This document shows positions 2,407 to 29,568 of a stretch of 64,000 nt of DNA, piece by piece (the stretch's first letter is position 1; every line of letters begins with the position of its first letter). The notes under the pieces are model-generated. The model saw nothing but the letters and a program-made list of their open reading frames with translations. It was not told where the DNA came from and made no database searches. The stretch lies in assembly GCA_963924565.1 (NCBI GenBank), contig OZ004612.1, forward strand, positions 10,602,001-10,666,000. Direction: 5' to 3'. The stretch comes from Ascidiella aspersa (lineage: Eukaryota). Both the position numbers and the translations under genes were made by a program.

Positions 2407-5400
2407 CTATTTGCGTGTCAAAAAAGCAAACATTGACGCTTTTTTGATTAGCTTTCTCCAGGCATGTTTAGACGCGGCTCCGTGACAGCAGTAAAGATAA
2501 AAAATGAACACTCCTTGAAGTCCGTTGACTGCCACGTGGATGGATGAAAACGCGATCGAGGCTCTGCTTGATGGCAAGCCTAAAAGTTTGAAAATTACAA
2601 GCTTTAGGGCTAGGCTATACGAGGTCCGTATTAAATGACGACAGTATTTGGACTTAAGTTATTTCGCGAATGACTTACTTGGCTGGGAGTTAAACTCATT
2701 TCAAAATGAATTGTTTAGAGCACTGCGAAATATGATAAACTAACTGCATTTTAACACGATAAGTACGGTAGCTAAAGTTTGTTCTATAGGTCGAATTAGA
2801 ACACCTTTAAACATAAATTATCATGTAATATCAGCATTTATGCGTCAACAGTATGCCTGGCACCTATTTTAGTACTAATTCGAAAAGAGTGAATCAGCAC
2901 TAATTAATAGACAAATCACCTGATAGAAAACCAAAGATCCATCCTATTCCCAAAACCGGCAGGAGAGTGAGCACCGCTTTAAGGCTTAACTCCACGTGGT
3001 GAATCGCCTGGTGATTCCGCTCTTCTTCGGGCTTGAACTTGTTCGCGTCCACGCTTTTGCCGTAGACAAAGTAGGCGACATGGCCTACGATGAATGAGTT
3101 TATCAGCGACAGTACCAGCAGTGGTGCCATCAGGCTGCTCACGTACAATGCGGTTGACTGTGAATTGACCAGGCAGTGGAGGTACTTTCGGAAATGATAC
3201 GGGTCCCGGGCGACGCCGCTGTTATTTCGATGATCCACCGATGTCTCGATCATGTTGCGGAAGAACGGATTGATCTCCATGTAAGTTCCGTCTAGAAAGC
3301 ACCAAGCGTCATTTAACTGAGGCCTACAAACATATACCCAAGGGGTAAACGAAGTTTGTTTGCAAACACAATATTTTCAGCGATAAAATTAGTTTTCCTT
3401 TTCAGGAAAAAACGCTTGTAGCGATTTTTAAATTTCAGGGGGTAAAAAAATAAAAAGGCGATTTTTATATTTTTTATTTGTTTCAAATAAAATATTTGGC
3501 AATTGAATAATGTTAAAAAAAGACAGAAGGTCGTGCTTCGATTTGTTTCTACTTAACAAGCATGTAACACAGTTTCATACATTTAATTAAAATCTTACTC
3601 AAGTGGCCGATTGTAGCCGCAATAACAACAATAACCGCAGGGGTTCCCCATCCCAAAAGAAGGCGCGAAACGTCCCAGCTTCGACGGTTCATAGCCTTCA
3701 TGCAATTGAAGAACGACTTCGATGTCTTTGAACTTAATGTCAATCCTTCATTCAGCATCCAGAATCCTAAATTGAGAGCTTTTGTATATGTGTAGTATAC
3801 TGAAAACGTCGGTACCGGTATAGGCCTTTAAACGTATGTAATAGACCTTTTATTGACAGCAAATAGAGTTTCAAAAAGTTGTATTGTGAACTGGTGGCGT
3901 TCATACTATTTAGGCTACTGAAGAAGCGTACCATTTTGGTAGAGCTGTCATGTCAATGCATGCTATTGAGTTAAACTAAGCATTACAAAATCGAGTTGAT
4001 AAAGTTTTTATTTTGGTTTAAATAATGGAAAACATGTCATTCCTGTTTGTCAACACTATAGTTATTTAATAAATATGCTGTTGCTACCAGGCATAGTATA
4101 TTTAAAACAGGTTCCTCTGGCAATATATATTATTTTCTACCAACGTTTCGGCTTACTATCCGGCAAGCCTTCGTCAGGGACTGACACACAAAGCCAACAA
4201 TTTTATTTTACTTTGCGTCTTGTTGGCTTTGTGTGTCAGTCCCTGACGAAGGCTTGCCGGATAGTAAGCCGAAACGTTGGTAGAAAATAATATATATTGC
4301 CAGAGGAACCTGTTTTAAATATACTATAGTAATTTATCAAAGCTAAGCCCATAACCTTAAAGCAGTGTTTCTCAACCTTTGTTGGCAACGACCTAAATAC
4401 AAAGCGTAAAGATAACAGCGAAACTTTTGAGACCAATTCTTTTCACTGAACTTTTTTATAAGCGAAAATATTAGAATAAATTAGATCAAATTAAATTAAT
4501 AAAAGGCATGTCTTTGTATTGCTTCCTCAATTTTTACAATTATTTAAGAATTATTCCCACAACCAAAAGCAATTTATCCAAACATATAAAACAAACTGCA
4601 GTCGGCGACCCAACCAAATTAACCGGCAACACATTTGCTTTAAACGACAGATTTACATGTTGTGCAATGAGACCGCTTTTCCGTTTAGAAACACTGCCTT
4701 AAGAATTTCTGAAAATTTTAGACCAAACTGTTAGCCTTAAGAGAATGCCGGCTACCAACCACACCTGAAGCGAGCAGAAAGTAATGGGTGGTTATCGCTT
4801 CAATTTCGCACGCAGTGGCGCTGCGGAGCGCCAGGTCGTGCATCAGTTTGAAGGCGTAAAAGAGAAGAAGTGCCAGGGCCAGATTGACTTGAACCAGAAG
4901 GCGGTCGCCCGAGTAGGACTTGCGCATTACCAGTAGGTATATGACAGTGATGAGCAGGCAAAACACGGACAGGCCGACAGCAACGAAAGAAGCTATCTGC
5001 GAATTAAAAACTTTGATTATAAACTCCCATTTCGCAGGAGACGTTGCATTGTGATTACGGGCGACAAAAACGTAGCACGAAAGTGTTGCAACAGGTGATG
5101 GTCTACGCAAAGTGTTGCACCAAGCATACACTTATCCTTATGCTGAATCATTTAAAAATATTTCGATTAGTTATTATTCAAATAGACCCCGACTTAGAAA
5201 AATAATGCCATATTTTTGCCATATTTAGCGTTATTATAAAAATCAGTTTGTCGAGCCAGAGATTCACACTGTCATGGTGGTTAATTAACTGGATTTACAT
5301 GTAATGAGGAAATCCTAAATATTAAATCCTAAAAAAGAATGCTTAGTGATGCGTTGAAATGTAATGAAAACTCGCAAAACGTGAAATAGTTATTATGGGT

Positions 5401-8400
5401 TATTAATAACTGGTTCAGTCCATGAAAGTATTTCCGTACAAGAGTTTGAAAATGAAACAAAGTAACCGAAATAACCTTCGTAATAAATGTGACGTGATAG
5501 GCGGGCATTTGTGTTGTGTTGATATTATAGCTAACAATTGCAAACATTTGTTTGTGTCTGTAAGTTGGATCAGATAACGATAACATACATTGAAAAACAT
5601 TTGTTTAAAAACGGTTACATTGAAAACATAACGATTCGTTTAACAAGCGAATAAAATACATACCAAAACAGCAAAAAGAATCTTTAAAACCAAAAGGAAA
5701 TAAAAAATACTGTTCTAACAACAAAACAAAAAATAACATTATAGAAAACGCATTTTTAAAATAAATATACAGCAAGCTTGGATAAGCAAATCCTTTAAAT
5801 AAATCAGTAGTTCTTAAAGTTTTTTTTGACGCCTTTAAAACATTTATAGGACTTGCTACTAGGGATGTTCAAAATAGAATCCCAAGGTATTCTAGAATAA
5901 TAGGTTTCGAATCTAGAATAACGAATCCAGAATAGCGAATCCTAGTATATTTTTATTAAATTATTTAGCCTCGATTTTGTTTGGGGAAGAGGTTAATCTT
6001 TATCTACCTTACAGGGCCCACAATCACAGCAATAAATCGCCCAAACAATTTGCTAACATGTGTACATTATAATTAAAAAAAATCTCCCATTTACATTCTT
6101 AACAACTGTCATCTGAAGCCGTTCTGTTAACTGTAATATGTCAACTGTCCAGGCTGTGTCCAAAACTTATATTTTTGCCAATAGTGAGTACATATGCAAC
6201 ACTGCACGCAGAACTATTTAGCAATTCGGTCGTGTTTTTTCAAGCATTGTTGGGTCTTAGGGCTTCTTTTTTGACTAACATGATCTGTTATGCAGCCAAA
6301 TAATGTACTGCAAAGAATACAGAGTTACTATTGACTTTAGCCGCTCGCCCAATAACGCTTGATTGACGCTTAATTATTAGACGAATGTTACCGCGAGACG
6401 CGGTAATTGGTCGCCCGAAAAAACGCTGTACTACGAGGTTACATTTAAAGCAACCACTACAAATTGGTCGCCGCAGCGACAGGCCAACTTTCCACACGCG
6501 TTTGTACAATTAGTCGCAGCAACAATCGACGATAAAACATTAAATTATATCTGTTCCAATTACCCGAAATAAACGGCAGAATGGGAAGGATTCGATATTC
6601 TACTTTGAACATCCCTACTTGCTACAAACCCAACGATATAGGGATTGTGCTAATTCTCATTTATTGGTTTGTGCACATGCCTGGGGATAATAATAATATA
6701 TATTAAACAGTTTATAACCGCAGTTGAGCATTTATATTCGTAACGCCTTTGATAATAATAATTAAAAAGGCGCACCCTAGCAGAGCGTCGCGACGCACAG
6801 TTTGTGAAATTAACAGAACACAAAAAAGAATCCGACTCTACAAAATAACAAGACTAAATGTAGAGCGATACCTACAAACGGTTTACCTTTATGCCGTGCG
6901 GTATGGAGTGTCGGTGGAAGGCGAGTATTACGGCGAACATGGTGGTGTGGTTGCACTTGCATCTCACCCGCCCGTCCACTACCCTTGCCTCAGCACAGCC
7001 CCGAGTTGCCATCTCCGCGACGTCGTGGTCGATAAAGGTGCAGCGGTACTCGATCTGCGTCACCGTCTCGTCTCCTCCCATCTGCCGCGCGTACTCGTCC
7101 GCGCACGAGTCGCCGCGCACGTCAGCCGAGTAGACGAGTTTCGAAGAACGCGCGGCCCGCATGCCTCTCGTCTCGGAGTAGGCCGAAGCCGAAAGCAGCG
7201 TGGCGCCAGTCGGTAGCCTGAAGGCCACTTTTTCCGGCTCGCTTTTGGGCAGAAAAAGCGACAAGTTGCTCAAGGGCAGGTTAATTTCCGCCAGAACCGC
7301 GACGAAGCCTCTTTTTCGTTTCGTTATTGCCTCGAAGCTTTCAACAGCCATGCGGGTAAAATTGGCAGACGCGTTTCGCGAGCGAACCACGCAAATTGCC
7401 ATGGCCGGTATCGTCCCCTCGCTGAAGTTCCGGCCCGGCCGAGCCCTGGCCATATCTTCGAGGCCCTTGTGGACCCGCCTGAGTTTACCGGACAGTTGGA
7501 CGGCCGATTCCGCTTGACCCGGGTAGAGAATTTCACGCGTTACCTTGTAAAGTTCAGCAAACGAAAAGTAGTCCGGTCGAAAAAAACCTGCGAAAAAACA
7601 TTGTACTTCAGTCGTTTGCTGAATACGTGTCGTGTCCTTTACCCTCTTCTGTACTAACCTGCGGCACCGCCTCGTATATGTTTAGGCCTGACAGCGCTCA
7701 CTCTTTGTTTTTCTGCAAAAATAATAAAATTAGAATCGTTGCTGTTTTTTGCAAACAGACTAGGAACGGTATAAACAACTTTAAGTGGAACACCTTAGGC
7801 CCAGTCTGGAGGATATGTAATTAGTAATAACGAAACAAAACATTTTCATTGTAAAATTGGTTTTATTTTCCTTTCACAAGTAAAGTAGTACATTCATAGT
7901 TGGGGTTTTTATCTTACGAGCCGCTTTTTTAAGCTCATGTTGGGTGTATTTTGGATGAAAACAAGTATTGAGTAATTTTTTAAAATTAATGAACAGAAGT
8001 ATACAGTCACTGGTGCTTCGACGCCATGTCACGAGACAACGGTTTTTATATAGTCATGCTCCTCAAAATACATATTAGCAGACCCGCCATTAATGTCCAT
8101 ATTTATTTCTCGGAAATAAAGCGACCCGACATGAGTAGCGCCTAATTAAGCTGTTGTAGCGAACTTTCGAATGTCGCATCATGCTTTCTATATAGTTTTA
8201 ATTTAGTAATGCCATAATAATAGTCACTGTGGCTAAACATTCAGAGGTAATACCTCAAATTAAAAACTCCGTAAATTGCAATTTTTGTATCCCGTATTTG
8301 CCACAGAGACCCCGAAATATCTTTCTATACATGTTGAAATGGCAGTTTTAATTAATTCAGTCAATAAGGCCGTTAAGCAACACTTTTATAAAGGGCTGGA

Positions 8401-23032: not shown

Positions 23033-25252
23033 ATGGGGAAACAAAAATTGAAGGCAAAGGCCCGAAAGGACAAGTACTACCAGCTTGCAAAGGAGACTGG
23101 GTACAGAGCTAGATCGGCATTCAAGCTTTTGCAACTCAACAAGAAATTTAACTTTCTTCAGTCTTCCCAAGTTCTCATTGACCTGTGCGCTGCCCCTGGT
23201 GGCTGGCTGCAAGTCGCTTCAGAGCACATGCCTGTAAAGAGCATCATTATTGGTGTGGATCTTGTTCCAATTAAACCGATCCCGCGGTGTATAACTTTTC
23301 AGGATGACATTACAAAGGAAAGCTGCAGGTCGCAAATCAGAAATGAGCTTCACAGTTGGAAAGTGGATTGTTTTTTAAACGATGGTGCGCCAAACGTTGG
23401 AAAGAACTGGCTCTTTGATGCTTATTCACAATCGGTCCTGGCACTTCACGCTCTTAAACTTGCCTGCGAGTTTTTAAAAAAAGGTGGATGGTTTATAACC
23501 AAGGTATTTCGTTCTAAAGACTACCAAGCTCTTATGTGGGTTTTCGGACAACTTTTTAACAAAGTTCATGCAACAAAACCACAAGCTTCGAGGAATGTCT
23601 CCGCTGAAATTTTCGTGGTATGTCAAGGTTACAAGTGCCCTGATAAAATTGATAACAAGTTTTTTGATCCTAAATCTGTTTTCCAAGATGTGGAAGGTAA
23701 AACCAGAGATATAAGTATTCTGGATTTTGAGCCAAAAAAGAAAAAGAAGGCCAAAGGTTACAGTGAGGAACGCGATTTGCTATTCCAACGCAAAACTGTA
23801 GAAGAATATTTGCAATCACCAAATCCATTACAGCTTCTGAGTGAAATTAATGAGTTGGTATTTTCATCAGAAGAAGAAAAAAGTCACAGTTTAGTCACAA
23901 AGGACGTCATTGAAAACGTCAAGGACATTAAAAGCCTTGGCAAGAAAGAAATTAAGGGTTTGTTGAACTGGCATCGTAAAAGGCGAAAAATGGATGCTCC
24001 GGAGGTAGACATCAGTGAAAAAGCTGACGAAGATGAAATTGATAGTGAAGAAGAGATTGACCGGAAGCTGGAAGAACTAAAAGAAGATGAAGCGAAAGCT
24101 TTAAAAAGGAAAAAAAAAGTTGTGATTAAAGAAAGAACAAAGCTAAGGGAGAGAATGAGTCATATGGCACAATCGATTGCTGTCCAAGAAGACATGGAAC
24201 TGTTTGCACTGAAAAATGTCGAGTCAGCAAACAATTTATCTGAACTAACAGAGGATGTTGATGTTGATCAAGCATTAATGTCCGATGATGATGAAGAGGA
24301 AGAAGATGGGGACCAGCAGTCCGATCTTGAAGAAGAATCTGCTTCAGAAAATGAAGAAAACAATAACATGACAAAAAATGTTGCAGCTGCTGATGATAAT
24401 GAAGAATTTGATGAATTTGAGACCCAGTTATGGTTCAACAAAGATGTTTTTAAAAAGATTAACGAAGATGAAAACGAAAATGATGAAGTCGCACATGCTG
24501 AAAACTATTACAAAAAAAAAAGTGAAAAGGCTGTCCATGATAATTTTGTGAGTAAGACTGCTAAACCAAAGGAAGAAACAGAAGTGGAGGCCTCTGACTC
24601 TGACAGTGATTCGGATGATGAAGCAGTTGATAAGGTGAAGACAAAACAACAGCCTAAAGCCATTAAAAGACAAAATTATAAAATGGATGCAGATGGTCTA
24701 GCTCTTGGTACTGTCATTTCCACATCAAACAAACGCAAACGGGACATAATTGATGACTCATTCAATCGTTATACTTTCAATGACAAGGAATGCGATCTCC
24801 CTGATTGGTTTTTAGATGACGAAAAGAAGAGAGTTTTCAAATCGCATCTGGACAAGCATGTTCCGAAAGACCTGGTGAGCTTCTACAAAACAAAGCAAAT
24901 GCAGATTAATGACAGGACTGTGAAGAAAGTTGCTGAGGCAAAAGCAAGAAAAAAACGAAAAATGATGAAGAAAATGGAAAAAGTTCGTAAACAAGCGGAA
25001 GGCATTACTGACTCTGCTGAGATGTCAAACAAGGAAAAGGCTGCTCACGTCAAGGGGATTTATAAAAAGGCAGGGCTTCTAGGTAAAAAGAAGGAGCACA
25101 CAACCTATGTATTTGCCAAAAAAGGAACAGGCAAGAGAGTACGTAGGCCTCCAGGAGTTGCCGGAAAATTCAAGGTGGTTGACAAAAGAATGAAAAAAGA
25201 CTTGCGCGCAGACAAAACCAAGTCTGGGAAATCTGGGAAAAGAAGAAAATAA
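23033..25252 (+). CDS. FTSJ3: Pre-rRNA 2'-O-ribose methyltransferase FTSJ3/Spb1 (intronless, 739 aa)
   Basis: DKYYQLAKETGYRARSAFKL, SAM-binding IDLCAAPGGW, K-D-K-E tetrad (AFKL, NDGAP, FITKVF, SAEIF), acidic middle region, Spb1 C-terminal domain (FNRYTF..LPDWF, KKVAEAKARKK, FKVVDKRMKKD). Confidence 0.97.
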   Translation: MGKQKLKAKARKDKYYQLAKETGYRARSAFKLLQLNKKFNFLQSSQVLIDLCAAPGGWLQVASEHMPVKSIIIGVDLVPIKPIPRCITFQDDITKESCRSQIRNELHSWKVDCFLNDGAPNVGKNWLFDAYSQSVLALHALKLACEFLKKGGWFITKVFRSKDYQALMWVFGQLFNKVHATKPQASRNVSAEIFVVCQGYKCPDKIDNKFFDPKSVFQDVEGKTRDISILDFEPKKKKKAKGYSEERDLLFQRKTVEEYLQSPNPLQLLSEINELVFSSEEEKSHSLVTKDVIENVKDIKSLGKKEIKGLLNWHRKRRKMDAPEVDISEKADEDEIDSEEEIDRKLEELKEDEAKALKRKKKVVIKERTKLRERMSHMAQSIAVQEDMELFALKNVESANNLSELTEDVDVDQALMSDDDEEEEDGDQQSDLEEESASENEENNNMTKNVAAADDNEEFDEFETQLWFNKDVFKKINEDENENDEVAHAENYYKKKSEKAVHDNFVSKTAKPKEETEVEASDSDSDSDDEAVDKVKTKQQPKAIKRQNYKMDADGLALGTVISTSNKRKRDIIDDSFNRYTFNDKECDLPDWFLDDEKKRVFKSHLDKHVPKDLVSFYKTKQMQINDRTVKKVAEAKARKKRKMMKKMEKVRKQAEGITDSAEMSNKEKAAHVKGIYKKAGLLGKKKEHTTYVFAKKGTGKRVRRPPGVAGKFKVVDKRMKKDLRADKTKSGKSGKRRK

Positions 25253-25478
25253 CCTTTTATGAACATGTTTTAAATTTATGTGTTTTCTATAGGCAAACCA
25301 AAATAGTTGTGTGGAATTTGTATAAATGTTTTGACAGTCAACTTTTGAAGTAACTTTACCTTGAATTTAACCAATAAATTGTAATAATCTTTAAGTGTAG
25401 TATCATTACATTTACGGTTTTGTTATTCTTTTCTCACTGCAAACTTTTGGATTTCAGGTGCTTAAAAAGTTGTAGGGC

Positions 25479-27089
25479 ATGGGATCCAAAACTTTGTTTT
25501 TTAATGCAAAAATTTGGACATCTGCAAGCCAGACAAGATCATGGATGGTGGTTGATTCCCAAATCGGTGAAATTATGCAGTGTGGCTTTGCAGATGACCA
25601 ACCACCAAAAGATGAACCAATAACTAAGGTTGATATGAAGCAGAAGTGGATATTTCCAGGCTTCCATGACTCACACATGCACATTGAATCATTTGGACTG
25701 GCTTTAGATAAAGGCCATCTTGGATTACCATCCACAGTTACAGAATTACAGAGCCGTTTAGCCTGCAAGATTAATGATCTACCCACTGAAAGCGATTGGC
25801 TTGTTGGCTTTGGTTGGGATCATGACTTAATGGACCGTATGCCGACTTGTGAAGATTTAGATAAGGTTAGTAAGGGCCATCCAGTTGTGCTTCACAGGGT
25901 TTGCCTGCACATATTAGTAGCCAATAGCAAGGCACTTGAACTAGCTCATATAAGTGATAAATCTCCAGATCCAGAAAATGGTGTTATCGATCGTTTTCCT
26001 GCTAATCATCCAAAAGCTGGTCACCCAACTGGTGTTTTAAGGGAAGACGGAGGTGTTCATTTGATGGCCAAGGTAATTCCTTCCATAACGAGTGAGCAGA
26101 AAAAAACTAACATAAAAGCAGCACTAAATGAATGTGTCAAAGTTGGACTTACCAGTGTGCACACAGTTGACCAGTGCAGTTGGAATGAATATGTTGAACT
26201 TGCAAAGGACAACCAACTACCAATACATTGCTATTTTTCTGCTTGGTATGTTGATATAGATACTGATAATTTTCCTTCCAAGCCTTATGAGTCCTACAAT
26301 AATCTTTCCTGTGACTGTGTAAAAATATTTTTGGATGGCGCTTTAAATACCCAAACTGCAGCCTTGACTCAACCCTACGTTGGTAGCGACAGTAATTGTG
26401 GAGTCATGTTGTTAACTGACACTGAAATTGAATTAGCGTTTAACAAAGTTACCAAGGCTGGATTTAGAATGGAAATTCATGTTATAGGCGACAGGGCTGC
26501 CGAAGTGGCATTAAATTATTTGGAAAAATGCAAAGTGCCTCCTGAAAACCGCACCATCTTTGTCCACTGTCAAATATTGCGTTCTGAGCTTCTGAACAGA
26601 ATGCTAAAAAATGGAGTAGTACCAACTCTCCAGCCATCATTTGTTCCAACAGATTCCAAGCAGATCCGAAATCGCTTGCCGGAATCCTTGCAGCAATGTA
26701 TTTATCCGTGGCGGACTTTAATCAAGAAGGGAATTCCATGTGGTGGAAGCAGTGATGCTCCAGTCGAGACCATCAACCCTTTACAAGGAATCTATGATGC
26801 AATTTTTAGGCCTGATTTAATGTTTAATGATGGAAGGCCCTTTATTGAAAAAGAATGTTTAACATTTGAAGAAGCTATTAATCTTTACACCATTGGATCT
26901 GCATTCGCTGATAAGGCAGAAAAATACAAGGGAAAAATTAAAGCAGGATTTCAGGCAGATTTTGTTGTACTTAATGTACCGTTAGATAAAAGTGGAAAAC
27001 CTAGAAACCTCATTAAAAACCCTGAGCTAATAAAAACTTGTAGTATAAAACAAGTCTGGGTGAAAGGAAAATGTTTGTGGGAAAATTAA
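25479..27089 (+). CDS. YtcJ-like metal-dependent amidohydrolase (Amidohydro_3 type), intronless, 536 aa
   Basis: PGFHDSHMH (HxH), WLVGFGWD, H.LVANSKALELA, PTGVLRE, VKIFLDGAL, IHVIGDRA, VHCQ, GGSSDAPVE..NPL.GI, EAINLYT.GSA, KGKIKAGFQADFVVL: the motif series of the YtcJ/NfdA/LAF3 family. Confidence 0.9.
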   Translation: MGSKTLFFNAKIWTSASQTRSWMVVDSQIGEIMQCGFADDQPPKDEPITKVDMKQKWIFPGFHDSHMHIESFGLALDKGHLGLPSTVTELQSRLACKINDLPTESDWLVGFGWDHDLMDRMPTCEDLDKVSKGHPVVLHRVCLHILVANSKALELAHISDKSPDPENGVIDRFPANHPKAGHPTGVLREDGGVHLMAKVIPSITSEQKKTNIKAALNECVKVGLTSVHTVDQCSWNEYVELAKDNQLPIHCYFSAWYVDIDTDNFPSKPYESYNNLSCDCVKIFLDGALNTQTAALTQPYVGSDSNCGVMLLTDTEIELAFNKVTKAGFRMEIHVIGDRAAEVALNYLEKCKVPPENRTIFVHCQILRSELLNRMLKNGVVPTLQPSFVPTDSKQIRNRLPESLQQCIYPWRTLIKKGIPCGGSSDAPVETINPLQGIYDAIFRPDLMFNDGRPFIEKECLTFEEAINLYTIGSAFADKAEKYKGKIKAGFQADFVVLNVPLDKSGKPRNLIKNPELIKTCSIKQVWVKGKCLWEN

Positions 27090-27481
27090 CATGATGGTTT
27101 GTTCGATTTAAAATACGTTATACGTTATCTTAATGTTAATTATCCAAGAAAACAGAATAAAATTCATGTGGTGTTTTTATGTATTTTTTAGCTCTGTTCT
27201 TGTTACTACATGGGAAAAAAGTTTGGTGAAATGTGTGTTTACTTTGTCATTGTACTGAATAATAATGCATGCACAGTATTTTTTATAATGTTATAATCTT
27301 GCATACACTGTATGCATGTTGATGTCTGGTACTAAAATAGCATGATGCAACATTTAATTTTAATTCATATCTTTGTATAAGTTTATTTTGTACATTCCTA
27401 AGTGCAATTGAAAAGTTTTAATTATTATATTACAGATATTTCATAGTCTGGGTTTAACCTAATATATTAATCACGCAAAAA

Positions 27482-28722
27482 ATGGTCCTCCAAGGTATTT
27501 GTGTTCTTACTGGCGATTATGGCACTATCGAGTTTCATCAAGAGGGAGATCAATGCAGCATCAAAGGTAAGCAAATTGGTTGTTCCATAGGCTCGTATTT
27601 TTTACTAACCAGTGCAAAATTGCTTCTTTATTACATGAAAATTGTATGCGTTAGATAACATGTGTTAACTGAAGCAAACCTTTTCCTTATAATAACTTTC
27701 TTATACACCTTTAGGCTAAAACCATTTCCACTAAAACGGGCCAAACGTAACATTTAAAAATTACATTTGCGTATAATTTAAAAATGTATTTTGGGGTTTC
27801 ATTGTCGTGTGTCTATATAGTATTTGGGAAAGTTTTGTATGCCTTTGGTGAAGTAAAGCACAATTATTGATAAGCTGGTCGAATCCCAAGGCGTTTTGTT
27901 CTAGCAGGGCGTCTTAAACACGCTCTGCACACCCACGTTCAGCGCCTATGGATGTTTCTGTGGTAGAAACTTTTAGCACTTCATCTGAAGAACATGTTGG
28001 CTGTTATAAGTGTTGTCCATACATTTTTGTGTATCGTTTAGTCTTCTATTATAATTTTAAGTTAGAAAATTAGCTTATAAATGTGATAATATTGCCAATT
28101 AAAACCGTCAATTAGGTACCAGTGCTCATATTCAGCACTCTGCTCTTTGGTTAAAAAATGTGGACCTACTACTTTCATTGTGATACACAAATAAACACCA
28201 GTGCATTTTTTTAGATGAACTCTACCTTTTGTATACTTATTCTGTTCAAACACAAACGTTTAGACAGCTGTGCATATGAGACTATGTAAAACAAGTGAAC
28301 AATGAAAAAAAAACTTGAACTTACATAGTTCTTTTACCTCTTGTGTGGGAGCAGGCAAAGTGAAAAATCTGACACCTGGTGAGCATGGCTTTCACATTCA
28401 CGAGTTTGGCGATCATAGCGGTGGCTGCACAAGTACTGGTGGTCATTTCAACCCTGAAGGTAAGGAACACGGGGGGCCAGAAATGGTGGAAAGGCATTTT
28501 GGCGACCTGGGAAACATCACAGCAGACGAACAAGGGGTTGCTGAAGTCAACATGACAGATAGCTTAGTCTCCCTAAGTGGAGCAAACTCGGTCATTGGAA
28601 GAGCTGTTGTCGTGCATGCTGACAAAGACGACCTTGGCCTGGGAGGTCATGCAGACAGCAAAAAAACTGGACATGCTGGAGGAAGAGTGGCTTGCGGCGT
28701 TATTGGAATTATGAAGAAATAA
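27482..28722 (+). CDS. SOD1: Cu/Zn superoxide dismutase (cytosolic); exons 27482-27566 and 28355-28722
   Basis: Exon 1 [22 protein letters not shown] splices in phase 1 to [64 protein letters not shown]. Metal ligands and both Cys are present. Confidence 0.96.
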
Positions 28723-29568
28723 ATGTTTGTTCTCAGTGATCTGTTATGTTTAGGTGTATATTCTAGAGATATGACTAATATACAGTGTGAATTCCAATTG
28801 ATTAATCGTGTGTTGCAAAGTCGTTGTTAATAAAGCTTCAATTTTCACTTTAAAAATACTCTCTTTAACACAAAACTTGTATAGTTTTCCTGCAACAAAA
28901 ATATTCACTTCTAAAAATAGTTTCTGTAAAAAAATTGACATCTGCAGTTTGTAAAGAAAGGTAGACTAAAAAACAAAAAAAAAGTACTGCTTATATAAAC
29001 TTTTTCAGGAAGCTTAATTAAAAATTCAAAACAAGTTTTGGCCTTTGAGGGTAGGTAAACCTTTCTAACATAAAAAATTATGTATGTTACAAAGTAAGTG
29101 CAAATACTTTATTATTTACACAGTACATTTTTGATTTAATATTAAAACAACACAAAAAGCCTAGGTAAAAGTGTAATTGGCAACCAAAGATTCAAGCCAG
29201 AAAAGGGTAAATACAACTAGTAGTCTATAGAAGGCTTCACATAAGATAAGAAAACATAGGACAGTGCGAGGAAATCTGAGACTATTGTGTTGTGCAACTT
29301 AAACAATGGTCAACCTGACCCAGGAGCAGCCCTGCTGAAGGTGACTAAATTAGCCCTGGTTAAAATTTTAGCAACCACTTTGTGAATAAAAGGTATGTGA
29401 CTGTGTGCAATTTGCACTTTAAAAAAAAACTAAATAAAAATATGGGTCCACAAGAGCTTCAAATAAACTATAAAAATGTTAAGTTGTGGTATAGCACAAT
29501 TGTACAATTTATTAAATAGAAATATTGCTTTATTTGTAAACAAAGTTTAACAACAGAAAACAGCTTTT

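What the first reader, a model, noticed from the sequence alone, without database searches (positions are those of the whole stretch)
25479..27089. Intronless bacterial-type YtcJ amidohydrolase embedded among animal housekeeping genes: HGT candidate
Seen: a complete 536-aa single-exon ORF retaining the expected metal-binding motifs (HxH, H in IHVIGD, H in VHCQ, D in SSDAP). It has its own upstream splice acceptor (25456-25457) and AATAAA (27156). Base composition and CpG scarcity match its neighbours, which argues against contamination. Known: the YtcJ/NfdA/LAF3 family is widespread in bacteria and also present in plants and fungi; I know of no vertebrate orthologue. Inference: either an old, ameliorated horizontal acquisition expressed through host operon signals, or an ancestral gene lost in vertebrates. 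The substrate is unknown. Intron absence is weak evidence here because FTSJ3 next door is also intronless.
Basis: partly seen in the sequence, partly recalled or inferred. Interest (0 to 1): 0.75.

Follow-up and report, generated by a model that had tools for sequence, protein, structure and literature searches.

The report
Ancient amidohydrolase gene kept in tunicates
This sea-squirt gene for a metal-dependent amide-cleaving enzyme is real, intact and expressed, but it is an old gene shared with annelid worms, single-celled eukaryotes and Asgard archaea rather than a bacterial import, and its Ciona counterpart was already described in print in 2026.

Summary
Window 25479-27089 (+) is an intact single-exon 536-aa ORF, a full-length Pfam Amidohydro_3 (YtcJ-like) protein with all six metal-site residues. 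It is single-copy on a chromosome-scale contig, lies between an intronless FTSJ3 and a spliced SOD1, and is transcribed from the + strand.

The title claim, a bacterial-type HGT candidate, does not hold.
- Orthologues occur in Phallusia, two Ciona species, Styela and four annelids.
- Tunicates plus annelids form one clade (100/99), inside a eukaryote clade (91/96).
- That clade includes choanoflagellates, Capsaspora, ichthyosporeans, oomycetes and algae.
- Its nearest prokaryotes are Asgard archaea (97/82).
- All named bacteria are separated from it (100/100).
- Forcing tunicates together with bacteria is rejected (p-AU 0.007).

Forcing Holozoa plus animals into one clade is not rejected (p-AU 0.15). 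I favour vertical descent with many losses, including in vertebrates (about 0.55), over an old eukaryote-to-animal transfer (about 0.33).

The Ciona orthologue KY21.Chr11.125 was published in July 2026 as an HGT candidate of "unclear" source, so the core finding is already known. The substrate is unknown and operon/trans-splicing is untested. An earlier scan note (s1-791100) covers this same stretch as an operon candidate.

The parts
25479..27089 (+). Single-exon CDS (536 aa plus stop) of a YtcJ-like / Amidohydro_3 metal-dependent amidohydrolase
   Evidence: ORF. Pfam PF07969 E 1.5e-74, full length. Single copy in the genome. RNA reads from the + strand.
25674..25682 (+). Codons of the H66-x-H68 (HxH) metal-binding motif
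   Evidence: Invariant in 18/18 and 52/52. Aligned to the HxH of 3ICJ.
26322..26324 (+). Codon of K282, at the position of the metal-bridging (carboxylated) lysine of binuclear amidohydrolases
   Evidence: Invariant in 18/18 and 52/52. Aligned to K in VKLFVDG of 3ICJ. The modification itself was not tested.
26478..26480 (+). Codon of H334 (IHVIGD)
   Evidence: Invariant. Aligned to H in VHAIGD of 3ICJ.
26565..26567 (+). Codon of H363 (VHCQ)
   Evidence: Invariant. Aligned to H in EHAS of 3ICJ.
26754..26756 (+). Codon of D426 (SSDAP)
   Evidence: Invariant. Aligned to D in STDSP of 3ICJ.
25456..25457 (+). Candidate 3' splice (trans-splice) acceptor AG, 21 nt upstream of the ATG
   Evidence: Present in the sequence after a T-rich tract. 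Use not shown: no loose ends were reported here at a depth of about 4.
27156..27161 (+). AATAAA polyadenylation signal candidate, 67 nt after the stop codon
   Evidence: Sequence. RNA depth is 9.1 in bin 27127-27257 and falls to 2.1 in 27258-27388.
23033..25252 (+). Upstream neighbour: intronless FTSJ3/Spb1 rRNA methyltransferase (context)
   Evidence: 739-aa ORF. FtsJ, DUF3381 and Spb1_C domains.
27482..28722 (+). Downstream neighbour: Cu/Zn superoxide dismutase, with first coding exon to 27566, intron 27567-28354 and second exon from 28355 (context)
   Evidence: Sod_Cu E 2e-45. GT..AG joint in 16 reads from 14 starts. Sequence.

Best explanation
This is a resident, expressed, single-copy tunicate gene. 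It encodes a probably cytosolic YtcJ-like amidohydrolase and is the orthologue of Ciona KY21.Chr11.125.

Mechanism (inferred from conserved residues and family knowledge). The protein forms a TIM-barrel metal centre ligated by H66, H68, K282, H334, H363 and D426. That centre activates water to cleave a C-N amide bond of a small N-acyl or N-formyl compound. The substrate is unknown.

Origin. The gene is not a bacterial import. It belongs to a eukaryote-wide but patchily kept clade whose closest prokaryotic relatives are Asgard archaea. The tunicate and annelid genes are sister groups. Most probably the gene was already in the bilaterian ancestor, and likely earlier in Holozoa. It would then have been lost many times, including on the vertebrate line.

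Shown here: the intact ORF, the conserved site, transcription, genomic linkage and the tree topology. Inferred: vertical descent, catalytic chemistry and cytosolic location.
For: Gene and site. Full-length PF07969. Six ligand residues invariant in 18/18 and 52/52 sequences. 3ICJ and 3IGH match at E 1.6e-41 and 9.8e-41, and 1.1e-97 and 2e-94 with a profile.

Residency. One copy in 308.6 Mb, and the window lies at 10.6 Mb of contig C6. DNA contigs of two samples bridge the gene to FTSJ3 and to SOD1 (table 8). GC equals that of FTSJ3, and CpG o/e is 0.40.

Expression. Reads of RNA run X4 lie in the same orientation as those across the SOD1 intron, at depth 1-13 with about 6% of the run read.

Constraint. 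Of 12 variants in the CDS, 7 are synonymous and 5 are not, on 337 against 1271 sites. That gives pN/pS of about 0.19.

Phylogeny, careful LG+G4 tree of 67 rows:
- bacteria against the rest, 100/100
- Asgard plus eukaryotes, 97/82
- eukaryotes, 91/96
- tunicates plus annelids, 100/99
- annelid group 98/95, and tunicate group 100/96 with Styela outermost
The same groupings appear in quick site-heterogeneous trees and in a 260-row FastTree.

AU tests. Tunicates plus bacteria is rejected, p 0.0067. Named Holozoa plus the animal clade as one group is not rejected, p 0.146.

Distribution. Holozoan protists have the gene: Monosiga, Hartaetosiga, Salpingoeca, Capsaspora, Amoebidium, Chromosphaera and 'Clim_evm'.

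Prokaryote scan. The 7 best of the 80 kept loci are archaeal, including Promethearchaeum syntrophicum MK-D1, at 35-40% identity. Bacteria reach 29-35%.
Against: No maximum-likelihood tree places the animal clade next to choanoflagellates or Capsaspora. The eukaryote backbone is unresolved, and the sister of the animal clade is an unnamed EukProt sequence (P0017, 97/92).

Non-rejection at p 0.146 is weak support, and it comes from LG+G4 only. The site-heterogeneous AU test did not finish.

Vertical descent needs a dozen or so independent losses in animals. The authors of PMC13390645 judged HGT among eukaryotes 'more parsimonious' (section 13).

A fly copy (Bradysia coprophila) nests inside oomycetes at 100/99. 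So this family does reach animal assemblies by transfer or contamination.

The patterns of the prokaryote scan were derived from an alignment holding four Asgard sequences, which favours finding Asgard genes.

Activity, metal content and location were not measured.
Confidence: 0.55

Rival explanations
1. Old eukaryote-to-animal horizontal transfer. A protist gene entered one bilaterian lineage before the crown groups formed, and tunicates and annelids share it through a second transfer between animal lineages. It has been fully domesticated since.
For: The distribution among animals is very patchy. Named animals in my lists are only 4 tunicates, 4 annelids and 1 fly. The animal clade does not sit with named holozoans in any ML tree. 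The Bradysia copy nests inside oomycetes at 100/99, and joining it to the animal clade is rejected at p 2.8e-74, which shows such events or contaminations occur. PMC13390645 favours this reading as more parsimonious (section 13).
Against: The tunicate and annelid groups are reciprocally monophyletic (100/96 and 98/95), not nested in one another. Any transfer would therefore predate both crown groups, close to the bilaterian radiation itself. No donor lineage is identified. Holozoa monophyly is not rejected. Animal-to-animal transfer has no known routine mechanism (general knowledge).
Confidence: 0.33
2. Direct horizontal transfer from a bacterium into the tunicate lineage, as for cellulose synthase, followed by amelioration.
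For: The gene is single-exon. The family is mostly prokaryotic: 16061 representatives at E<=0.001. RefSeq names the Ciona and Styela proteins after Bacillus YtcJ.
Against: Named bacteria are 29-35% identical, against 41-43% for annelids and 35-40% for Asgard archaea. Bacteria are split off by a 100/100 branch. Tunicates plus bacteria is rejected at p-AU 0.0067. The intronless state is shared with the neighbouring FTSJ3.
Confidence: 0.03
3. Contaminant or assembly artefact: the ORF belongs to an associated microbe or protist, not to the animal.
For: None found beyond the prokaryote-like gene structure.
Against: The gene sits at 10.6 Mb inside a chromosome-scale contig. Contigs from two DNA samples run from FTSJ3 into the gene and from the gene into the SOD1 intron (table 8). 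Its GC matches FTSJ3 and its CpG o/e is lower than both neighbours'. Orthologues exist in at least four named tunicates.
Confidence: 0.01

Closest known systems
Ciona robusta KY21.Chr11.125, 'metal-dependent hydrolase' with a YtcJ-like domain (Tamura, Oda-Ishii & Satou, Genome Biol Evol 2026, PMC13390645; sections 6, 13 and 15 read)
   Same: Taken as its orthologue. The Ciona intestinalis RefSeq 'putative amidohydrolase YtcJ' is 54% identical over 99% of the query and lies in the same tunicate clade. That this RefSeq protein corresponds to KY21.Chr11.125 is inferred from the shared name and domain, because no KY21 sequence was available here. The paper already reports the patchy metazoan distribution, the closeness of tunicate and spiralian proteins and the proximity to oomycetes. 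[quoted passage not shown]
   Different: This is another ascidian species, whose closest named relative is Phallusia at 58-59% identity. The paper's main text mentions neither Asgard archaea nor choanoflagellates or Capsaspora, and it leans to HGT among eukaryotes. My trees place the whole group in an Asgard plus eukaryote clade, and they do not reject holozoan monophyly. Its supplementary trees (Fig. S7) were not seen.
PDB 3ICJ and 3IGH, 'uncharacterized metal-dependent hydrolase' (deposited molecule names)
   Same: These are the only solved close relatives, at E 1.6e-41 and 9.8e-41, or 1.1e-97 and 2e-94 with a profile. The next best solved structure scores 1.2e-12. All six metal-site residues align.
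   Different: They are prokaryotic proteins without a known substrate. The window protein's alignment to them covers residues 50-500. No structure prediction could be made here.
Characterised YtcJ-like / PF07969 enzymes: N-substituted formamide deformylase NfdA, epsilon-lysine acylase SmELA, metal-dependent bile salt hydrolase BwBSH1
   Same: Same Pfam family and the same set of six predicted metal ligands. All cleave an N-acyl or N-formyl amide bond (passages of bioRxiv 10.64898/2026.04.05.716592, and of PMC10699109).
   Different: No sequence of these enzymes was compared here. No NCBIfam equivalog is matched: the best score is 26.6 bits against a cut-off of 375.4. BwBSH1 is a 101-kDa protein with extra domains. 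Substrate specificity therefore cannot be carried over.
Tunicate cellulose synthase CesA (bacterial HGT into tunicates; as described in PMC13390645, section 6)
   Same: A gene absent from vertebrates, present across tunicates, and detected by the same published screen.
   Different: CesA is a bacterial transfer restricted to tunicates. This gene also occurs in annelids and groups with eukaryotes and Asgard archaea, not bacteria.

Membership tests
Amidohydro_3 / YtcJ-like metal-dependent amidohydrolases (PF07969) | Full-length match to the family profile above the curated cut-off | tested here: met
   252.6 bits against a cut-off of 29.7, profile positions 3-470 of 472. 18/18 animal-clade members match.
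Amidohydro_3 / YtcJ-like metal-dependent amidohydrolases (PF07969) | Six metal-site residues (HxH, K, H, H, D) | tested here: met
   H66, H68, K282, H334, H363 and D426 are invariant in 18/18 and 52/52 sequences and aligned to 3ICJ. The count of six conserved metal-binding residues for YtcJ is from a figure legend.
Amidohydro_3 / YtcJ-like metal-dependent amidohydrolases (PF07969) | TIM-barrel fold with an inserted beta-sandwich domain | not tested
The fold is inferred only from sequence homology to 3ICJ and 3IGH.
Amidohydro_3 / YtcJ-like metal-dependent amidohydrolases (PF07969) | Metal-dependent hydrolysis of an amide bond | not testable with these tools
   Needs recombinant protein and assays.
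Bacterium-to-tunicate HGT genes (CesA type) | Closest relatives are bacterial and the gene nests within or beside a bacterial clade | tested here: not met
   Bacteria are separated by a 100/100 branch. The tunicates plus bacteria constraint is rejected, p 0.0067. The best prokaryotic loci are Asgard archaea.
Bacterium-to-tunicate HGT genes (CesA type) | Restricted to tunicates among animals | tested here: not met
   Capitella, Helobdella, Owenia and Dimorphilus orthologues form the sister group at 100/99.
Vertically inherited metazoan gene | Animal sequences monophyletic and branching in species-tree order | tested here: inconclusive
   Tunicates plus annelids are monophyletic, each phylum is monophyletic and Styela is outermost among tunicates. 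Only two phyla are sampled, and the Bradysia copy lies elsewhere.
Vertically inherited metazoan gene | Animal clade sister to unicellular holozoans | tested here: inconclusive
   Not recovered in ML trees, but not rejected by the AU test, p 0.146.
Tunicate operon gene resolved by SL trans-splicing | Reads carrying a spliced leader at the acceptor upstream of the ATG | tested here: inconclusive
   None was reported at 25457/25458, but local depth was about 4 with about 6% of the run read.
Tunicate operon gene resolved by SL trans-splicing | Same-strand neighbours with short spacers and continuous transcription | tested here: inconclusive
   The spacers are 226 nt (FTSJ3 stop to ATG) and 392 nt (stop to SOD1 ATG). 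Depth is never zero in the spacer bins (3.6 and 2.1), which overlapping UTRs explain equally well.

The most novel reading that the evidence does not exclude
The tunicate/annelid YtcJ-like amidohydrolase is a relic of the archaeal (Asgard) inheritance of eukaryotes. On this reading the enzyme was present in the last eukaryotic common ancestor and passed vertically through Holozoa to the first bilaterians. Among animals it survives almost only in tunicates and annelids, so vertebrates lost an enzyme that their closest invertebrate relatives still use, in Ciona in neural, blood and endostyle tissue.
Probability: 0.4. Interest if true: 0.45.

Novelty: already known. Interest (0 to 1): 0.3.

Why it matters
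Claims of gene transfer into animals often rest on a 'bacterial-looking' intronless gene that vertebrates lack, and this case shows how such a call changes with wider sampling.

- Once annelids, unicellular holozoans and Asgard archaea are included, the gene looks like old eukaryotic stock with heavy loss.
- That view tempers one of the eight HGT candidate groups published for Ciona in 2026.
- It points to an uncharacterised amide hydrolase that tunicates kept and vertebrates lost.

For the scan itself, the finding is a correct observation of a gene whose status is already in print.

Tried and rejected
Phylogeny runs that did not finish. The 'careful' site-heterogeneous (PMSF) tree of 80 rows was not finished in three runs, so I used the quick PMSF trees and a careful LG+G4 tree. 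The AU test under PMSF was not finished in three runs, so I repeated it under LG+G4. By the tool's own notes that model rejects true clades somewhat more often.

I therefore could not test introns in the Ciona, Styela or Capitella genes, or synteny of FTSJ3-YtcJ-SOD1. Styela isoforms X1 and X2 only hint at a multi-exon gene there.

Naming of hits. 0 of 10 clusters carried a name, 4 of 10 and 7 of 10. These sequences remain unnamed:
- P0017, the sister of the animal clade
- the P0144/P0134/P0138/P0029 group
- P0011 and P0012
- P0013, P0135, P0275 and P0277, which sit inside the annelid group
- P0174, a long branch
- the five to eight 'Tun_unk' rows (five, eight), which I call tunicate only because of their place in the tree
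A last word search with P0017 found no close relative of it.

Other animal YtcJ-like proteins. They are mentioned in print for Nematostella (JGI 202708; passage of PMC4877951) and for Crassostrea gigas (passage of PMC4531390). PMC13390645 cites InterPro counts of 14 spiralians, 4 ecdysozoans and 3 echinoderms. None of these appeared by name in my listed hits, so whether they belong to this clade is untested.

Function. NCBIfam gave only sub-threshold hits, so no substrate-level name can be assigned.

Literature. Searches for a published Asgard link ('Asgard', 'amidohydrolase', 'eukaryogenesis': 1 unrelated review) and for 'N-substituted formamide deformylase' with 'metazoa' (0 papers) found nothing. 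These are only two searches. PMC6006793 concerns ACY3 and is unrelated. They may already show protist or archaeal relatives.

Rejected: contamination and a direct bacterial origin (see the rival explanations).

Labelling slip. In some searches I labelled P0164 'Creolimax'. Its source name is Clim_evm4s159, probably Corallochytrium (recalled). It is a holozoan under either reading, and I relabelled it from then on. The labels 'Eug_' for EG_transcript_7241 (guessed to be Euglena) and for Artemidia (a diplonemid, recalled) come from memory.

Group definitions. The Bradysia group tested was defined after the tree was seen. The eight-row tunicate set tested likewise includes four unnamed rows (P0002, P0004, P0010, P0011) counted as tunicate only from their place in earlier trees.
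Full report
OBSERVATION

The window holds an ORF at 25479..27089 on the + strand: 536 codons with an ATG start. It matches Pfam Amidohydro_3 (PF07969) at E 1.5e-74 in one stretch. That stretch covers profile positions 3-470 of 472, with residues 51-532 matched. The gene is therefore complete in a single exon.

There is also K282 in VKIFLDG, at the position of the bridging lysine.
- All six residues are invariant in 18 of 18 sequences of the animal clade (alignment A1).
- They are invariant in 52 of 52 sequences that include protists, Asgard archaea and bacteria (A3).
- They align to the same residues of the two close solved structures, 3ICJ and 3IGH. Both are deposited as uncharacterised metal-dependent hydrolases, at E 1.6e-41 and 9.8e-41.
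- With a profile these score 1.1e-97 and 2e-94, and the next solved protein only 1.2e-12.

The AG at 25456-25457 and the AATAAA at 27156-27161 are in the sequence.

GENOMIC CONTEXT AND RESIDENCY

The upstream neighbour (23033..25252, +) is an intronless 739-aa FTSJ3/Spb1 protein with FtsJ, DUF3381 and Spb1_C domains. The downstream neighbour is a Cu/Zn superoxide dismutase. Its intron, 27567-28354 with GT..AG ends, is spanned by 16 RNA reads from 14 start points.

The window lies at 10,602,001-10,666,000 of contig C6, in a 308.6-Mb assembly of 75 contigs. A six-frame search of that assembly finds exactly one copy.

DNA contigs of run X1 cover 24900-27949 as part of a 10.5-kb contig that extends 7.5 kb further upstream. 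Contigs of a second sample (X2, carrying its own variants) bridge 24900-25689 and 25863-27884 (table 8). X1 may be the sample behind the assembly, and both runs belong to one study.

Composition: the CDS has GC 0.395 against 0.393 for FTSJ3. Its CpG o/e is 0.40, against 0.64 for FTSJ3, 0.52 for SOD exon 2 and 0.95 for the whole window. Such gene-body CpG depletion is what long-resident, germline-methylated tunicate genes show; that link is my inference from general knowledge. Contamination is excluded for practical purposes.

EXPRESSION AND CONSTRAINT

One RNA run of the same species label (X4) was laid on 24900-28800, with about 6% of the run read and 228 reads laid. All reads have the first mate on the - strand, the same as the reads across the + strand SOD1 intron. 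The transcript therefore comes from the + strand.

Depth over the CDS is 3-8 in the 5' third and 5-13 in the 3' third. It is about 0 in 26210-26471. The tool warns that dips are no finding, and no joint was reported there.

Depth is 3.6 in the FTSJ3-gene spacer bin and 2.1 in the gene-SOD1 spacer bin. That fits either read-through (polycistronic) RNA or overlapping UTRs. No loose ends were reported at the candidate acceptor. At this depth that says nothing about trans-splicing, and the earlier scan note proposing a three-gene operon (s1-791100) remains untested.

Twelve variants fall in the CDS, six from RNA run X4 and six from DNA sample X2. Seven are synonymous and five are not, over 337 synonymous and 1271 non-synonymous sites, so pN/pS is about 0.19. 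The numbers are small but consistent with purifying selection.

RELATIVES

The word search lists these named relatives (120 listed of 3265 hits among 8000 scored candidates):
- Phallusia mammillata, 58%
- Ciona savignyi, 58%
- Ciona intestinalis 'putative amidohydrolase YtcJ', 54%
- Capitella teleta, 41%
- oomycetes, 36-39%
- named bacteria, 30-34%

The exhaustive representative search found 16061 proteins at E<=0.001. Cluster look-ups named Styela clava (43%), Helobdella, Amoebidium and Achlya (4 of 10 named). A second look-up named Monosiga, Hartaetosiga, Chromosphaera, 'Clim_evm4s159', Vitrella, Prorocentrum and Artemidia (7 of 10 named).

A profile of the non-tunicate animal sequences added further names:
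- two annelids, Owenia and Dimorphilus
- Capsaspora and Salpingoeca
- Ectocarpus, Aurantiochytrium and a chrysophyte
- nine rows named as Asgard archaea (Heimdallarchaeota, Kariarchaeaceae, Promethearchaeota)
None of the 120 listed rows carried a bacterial organism name.

A scan of one genome per prokaryotic species kept 80 loci of 578 confirmed. The seven best are archaeal, at 35-40% identity: Hermodarchaeota, the cultured Promethearchaeum syntrophicum MK-D1, three Heimdallarchaeota and two unnamed archaea. The other 73 are bacterial at 29-35%, mostly Bacillota. One caveat applies: the search patterns came from an alignment that held four Asgard sequences.

No vertebrate, cephalochordate, echinoderm, mollusc or cnidarian name appears in any list.

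TREES

A 260-row FastTree already split an 88-row clade from a 172-row clade. The first holds every named eukaryote; the second holds every named bacterium.

The careful LG+G4 tree of 67 rows gives these supports, as ultrafast bootstrap / SH-aLRT:
- bacteria against the rest, 100/100
- Asgard plus eukaryotes, 97/82
- eukaryotes, 91/96
- tunicates plus annelids plus unnamed kin, 100/99
- the annelid-containing group, 98/95
- the tunicate group, 100/96, with Styela outermost and the window protein sister to Phallusia (100/98)

Quick site-heterogeneous trees agree on these groups. The backbone among eukaryotes is unresolved. The sister of the animal clade is an unnamed EukProt protein (P0017, 97/92), not the choanoflagellates.

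AU tests under LG+G4:
- Tunicates held with bacteria: rejected, with a log-likelihood difference of 83.8 and p 0.0067.
- The animal clade held with the seven named unicellular holozoans: not rejected, with a difference of 35.9 and p 0.146.
- The animal clade held with the Bradysia copy: rejected, p 2.8e-74. This group was defined after the tree was seen. That fly protein nests inside oomycetes (100/99).

INTERPRETATION

A direct bacterial origin is contradicted. The gene has been in the tunicate lineage since before the split of Styela from the Ciona/Phallusia side. It shares a common ancestor with the annelid genes that predates both crown groups.

Two readings remain.

(a) Vertical descent from an early eukaryotic, possibly Asgard-derived, gene through Holozoa and the bilaterian ancestor, with many losses. 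In favour:
- the reciprocal monophyly of the two phyla
- the presence of the gene in seven unicellular holozoans
- the non-rejection of holozoan monophyly
- the fully host-like composition

(b) An old transfer from a protist, plus a transfer between animal lineages. In favour:
- the extreme patchiness of the distribution
- the failure of ML trees to join animals to choanoflagellates
- the Bradysia example
- the published authors' parsimony argument

I put (a) at about 0.55 and (b) at about 0.33.

MECHANISM

The six conserved residues are the ligand set of binuclear amidohydrolases. Characterised members of this Pfam family hydrolyse N-formyl or N-acyl amide bonds:
- NfdA
- an epsilon-lysine acylase (SmELA)
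- a metal-dependent bile salt hydrolase (BwBSH1)
- aminoacylases
This comes from passages read.

The alignment to archaeal homologues starts at residue 1, so there is no presequence; a cytosolic location is my inference. I therefore commit to a cytosolic metal-dependent hydrolase of a small N-acyl or N-formyl compound. Chemistry and substrate are inferred, not shown. NCBIfam offers no equivalog.

WHAT IS KNOWN

Tamura, Oda-Ishii and Satou (Genome Biol Evol, July 2026, PMC13390645; sections 6, 13 and 15 read) list the Ciona orthologue KY21.Chr11.125 among eight groups of HGT candidates.
- They give its source as 'Unclear'.
- They note that tunicate and spiralian proteins are close and that the group lies near oomycetes.
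- They state that they cannot decide between HGT among eukaryotes and multiple loss, and they prefer the former.

The main text does not mention Asgard archaea, choanoflagellates or Capsaspora. Its supplementary trees were not seen.

VERDICT

Novelty: already known. Interest: 0.3.

Noticed in passing
P0359 (Bradysia coprophila 'putative amidohydrolase YtcJ'): The only named ecdysozoan homologue nests inside oomycetes (100/99) beside an unnamed metagenome protein at 65% identity. Joining it to the tunicate/annelid clade is rejected (p 2.8e-74). It is either an oomycete-to-fly transfer or contamination of that assembly.
   Followed up: partly
window 27913-28043 (inside the SOD1 intron): DNA contigs of both samples break at about 27949-27955. 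Short 31-mers there reach depths of 3500-8000, against about 63-96 elsewhere. This marks the edge of a high-copy repeat in the intron (tables 2, 7 and 8).
   Followed up: no
window 26210-26471: RNA depth is 0-0.2 in two adjacent bins in the middle of the CDS, which hold the K282 codon. The flanking bins show 1-5, and no joint was reported. The tool warns that dips are no finding. Divergent alleles or sampling at 6% of the run are likely causes.
   Followed up: no
window 27477 (A-run just upstream of the SOD1 ATG): A 1-nt deletion is seen in 16 of 27 RNA reads from 13 starts, but in neither DNA sample. It is a length polymorphism of the RNA donor or slippage in a homopolymer (table 4).
   Followed up: no
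P0336 (Heimdallarchaeota LC_3): One Asgard homologue falls inside the bacterial clade (98 with P0152), while the other named Asgard sequences group with eukaryotes. Asgard genomes therefore carry two different YtcJ-like lineages.
   Followed up: no
P0022, P0149, P0351: Some protist members of the eukaryote clade, for example the Aurantiochytrium sequence, are fusions of the amidohydrolase with a GDSL/SGNH lipase domain (PF13472, PF00657). This hints at a lipid-related amide substrate in those lineages.
   Followed up: no
window 23033-25252: FTSJ3/Spb1 is encoded by a single uninterrupted 739-codon ORF with all three domains. Intron absence is therefore a local feature of this gene cluster, not a mark of foreign origin.
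   Followed up: yes
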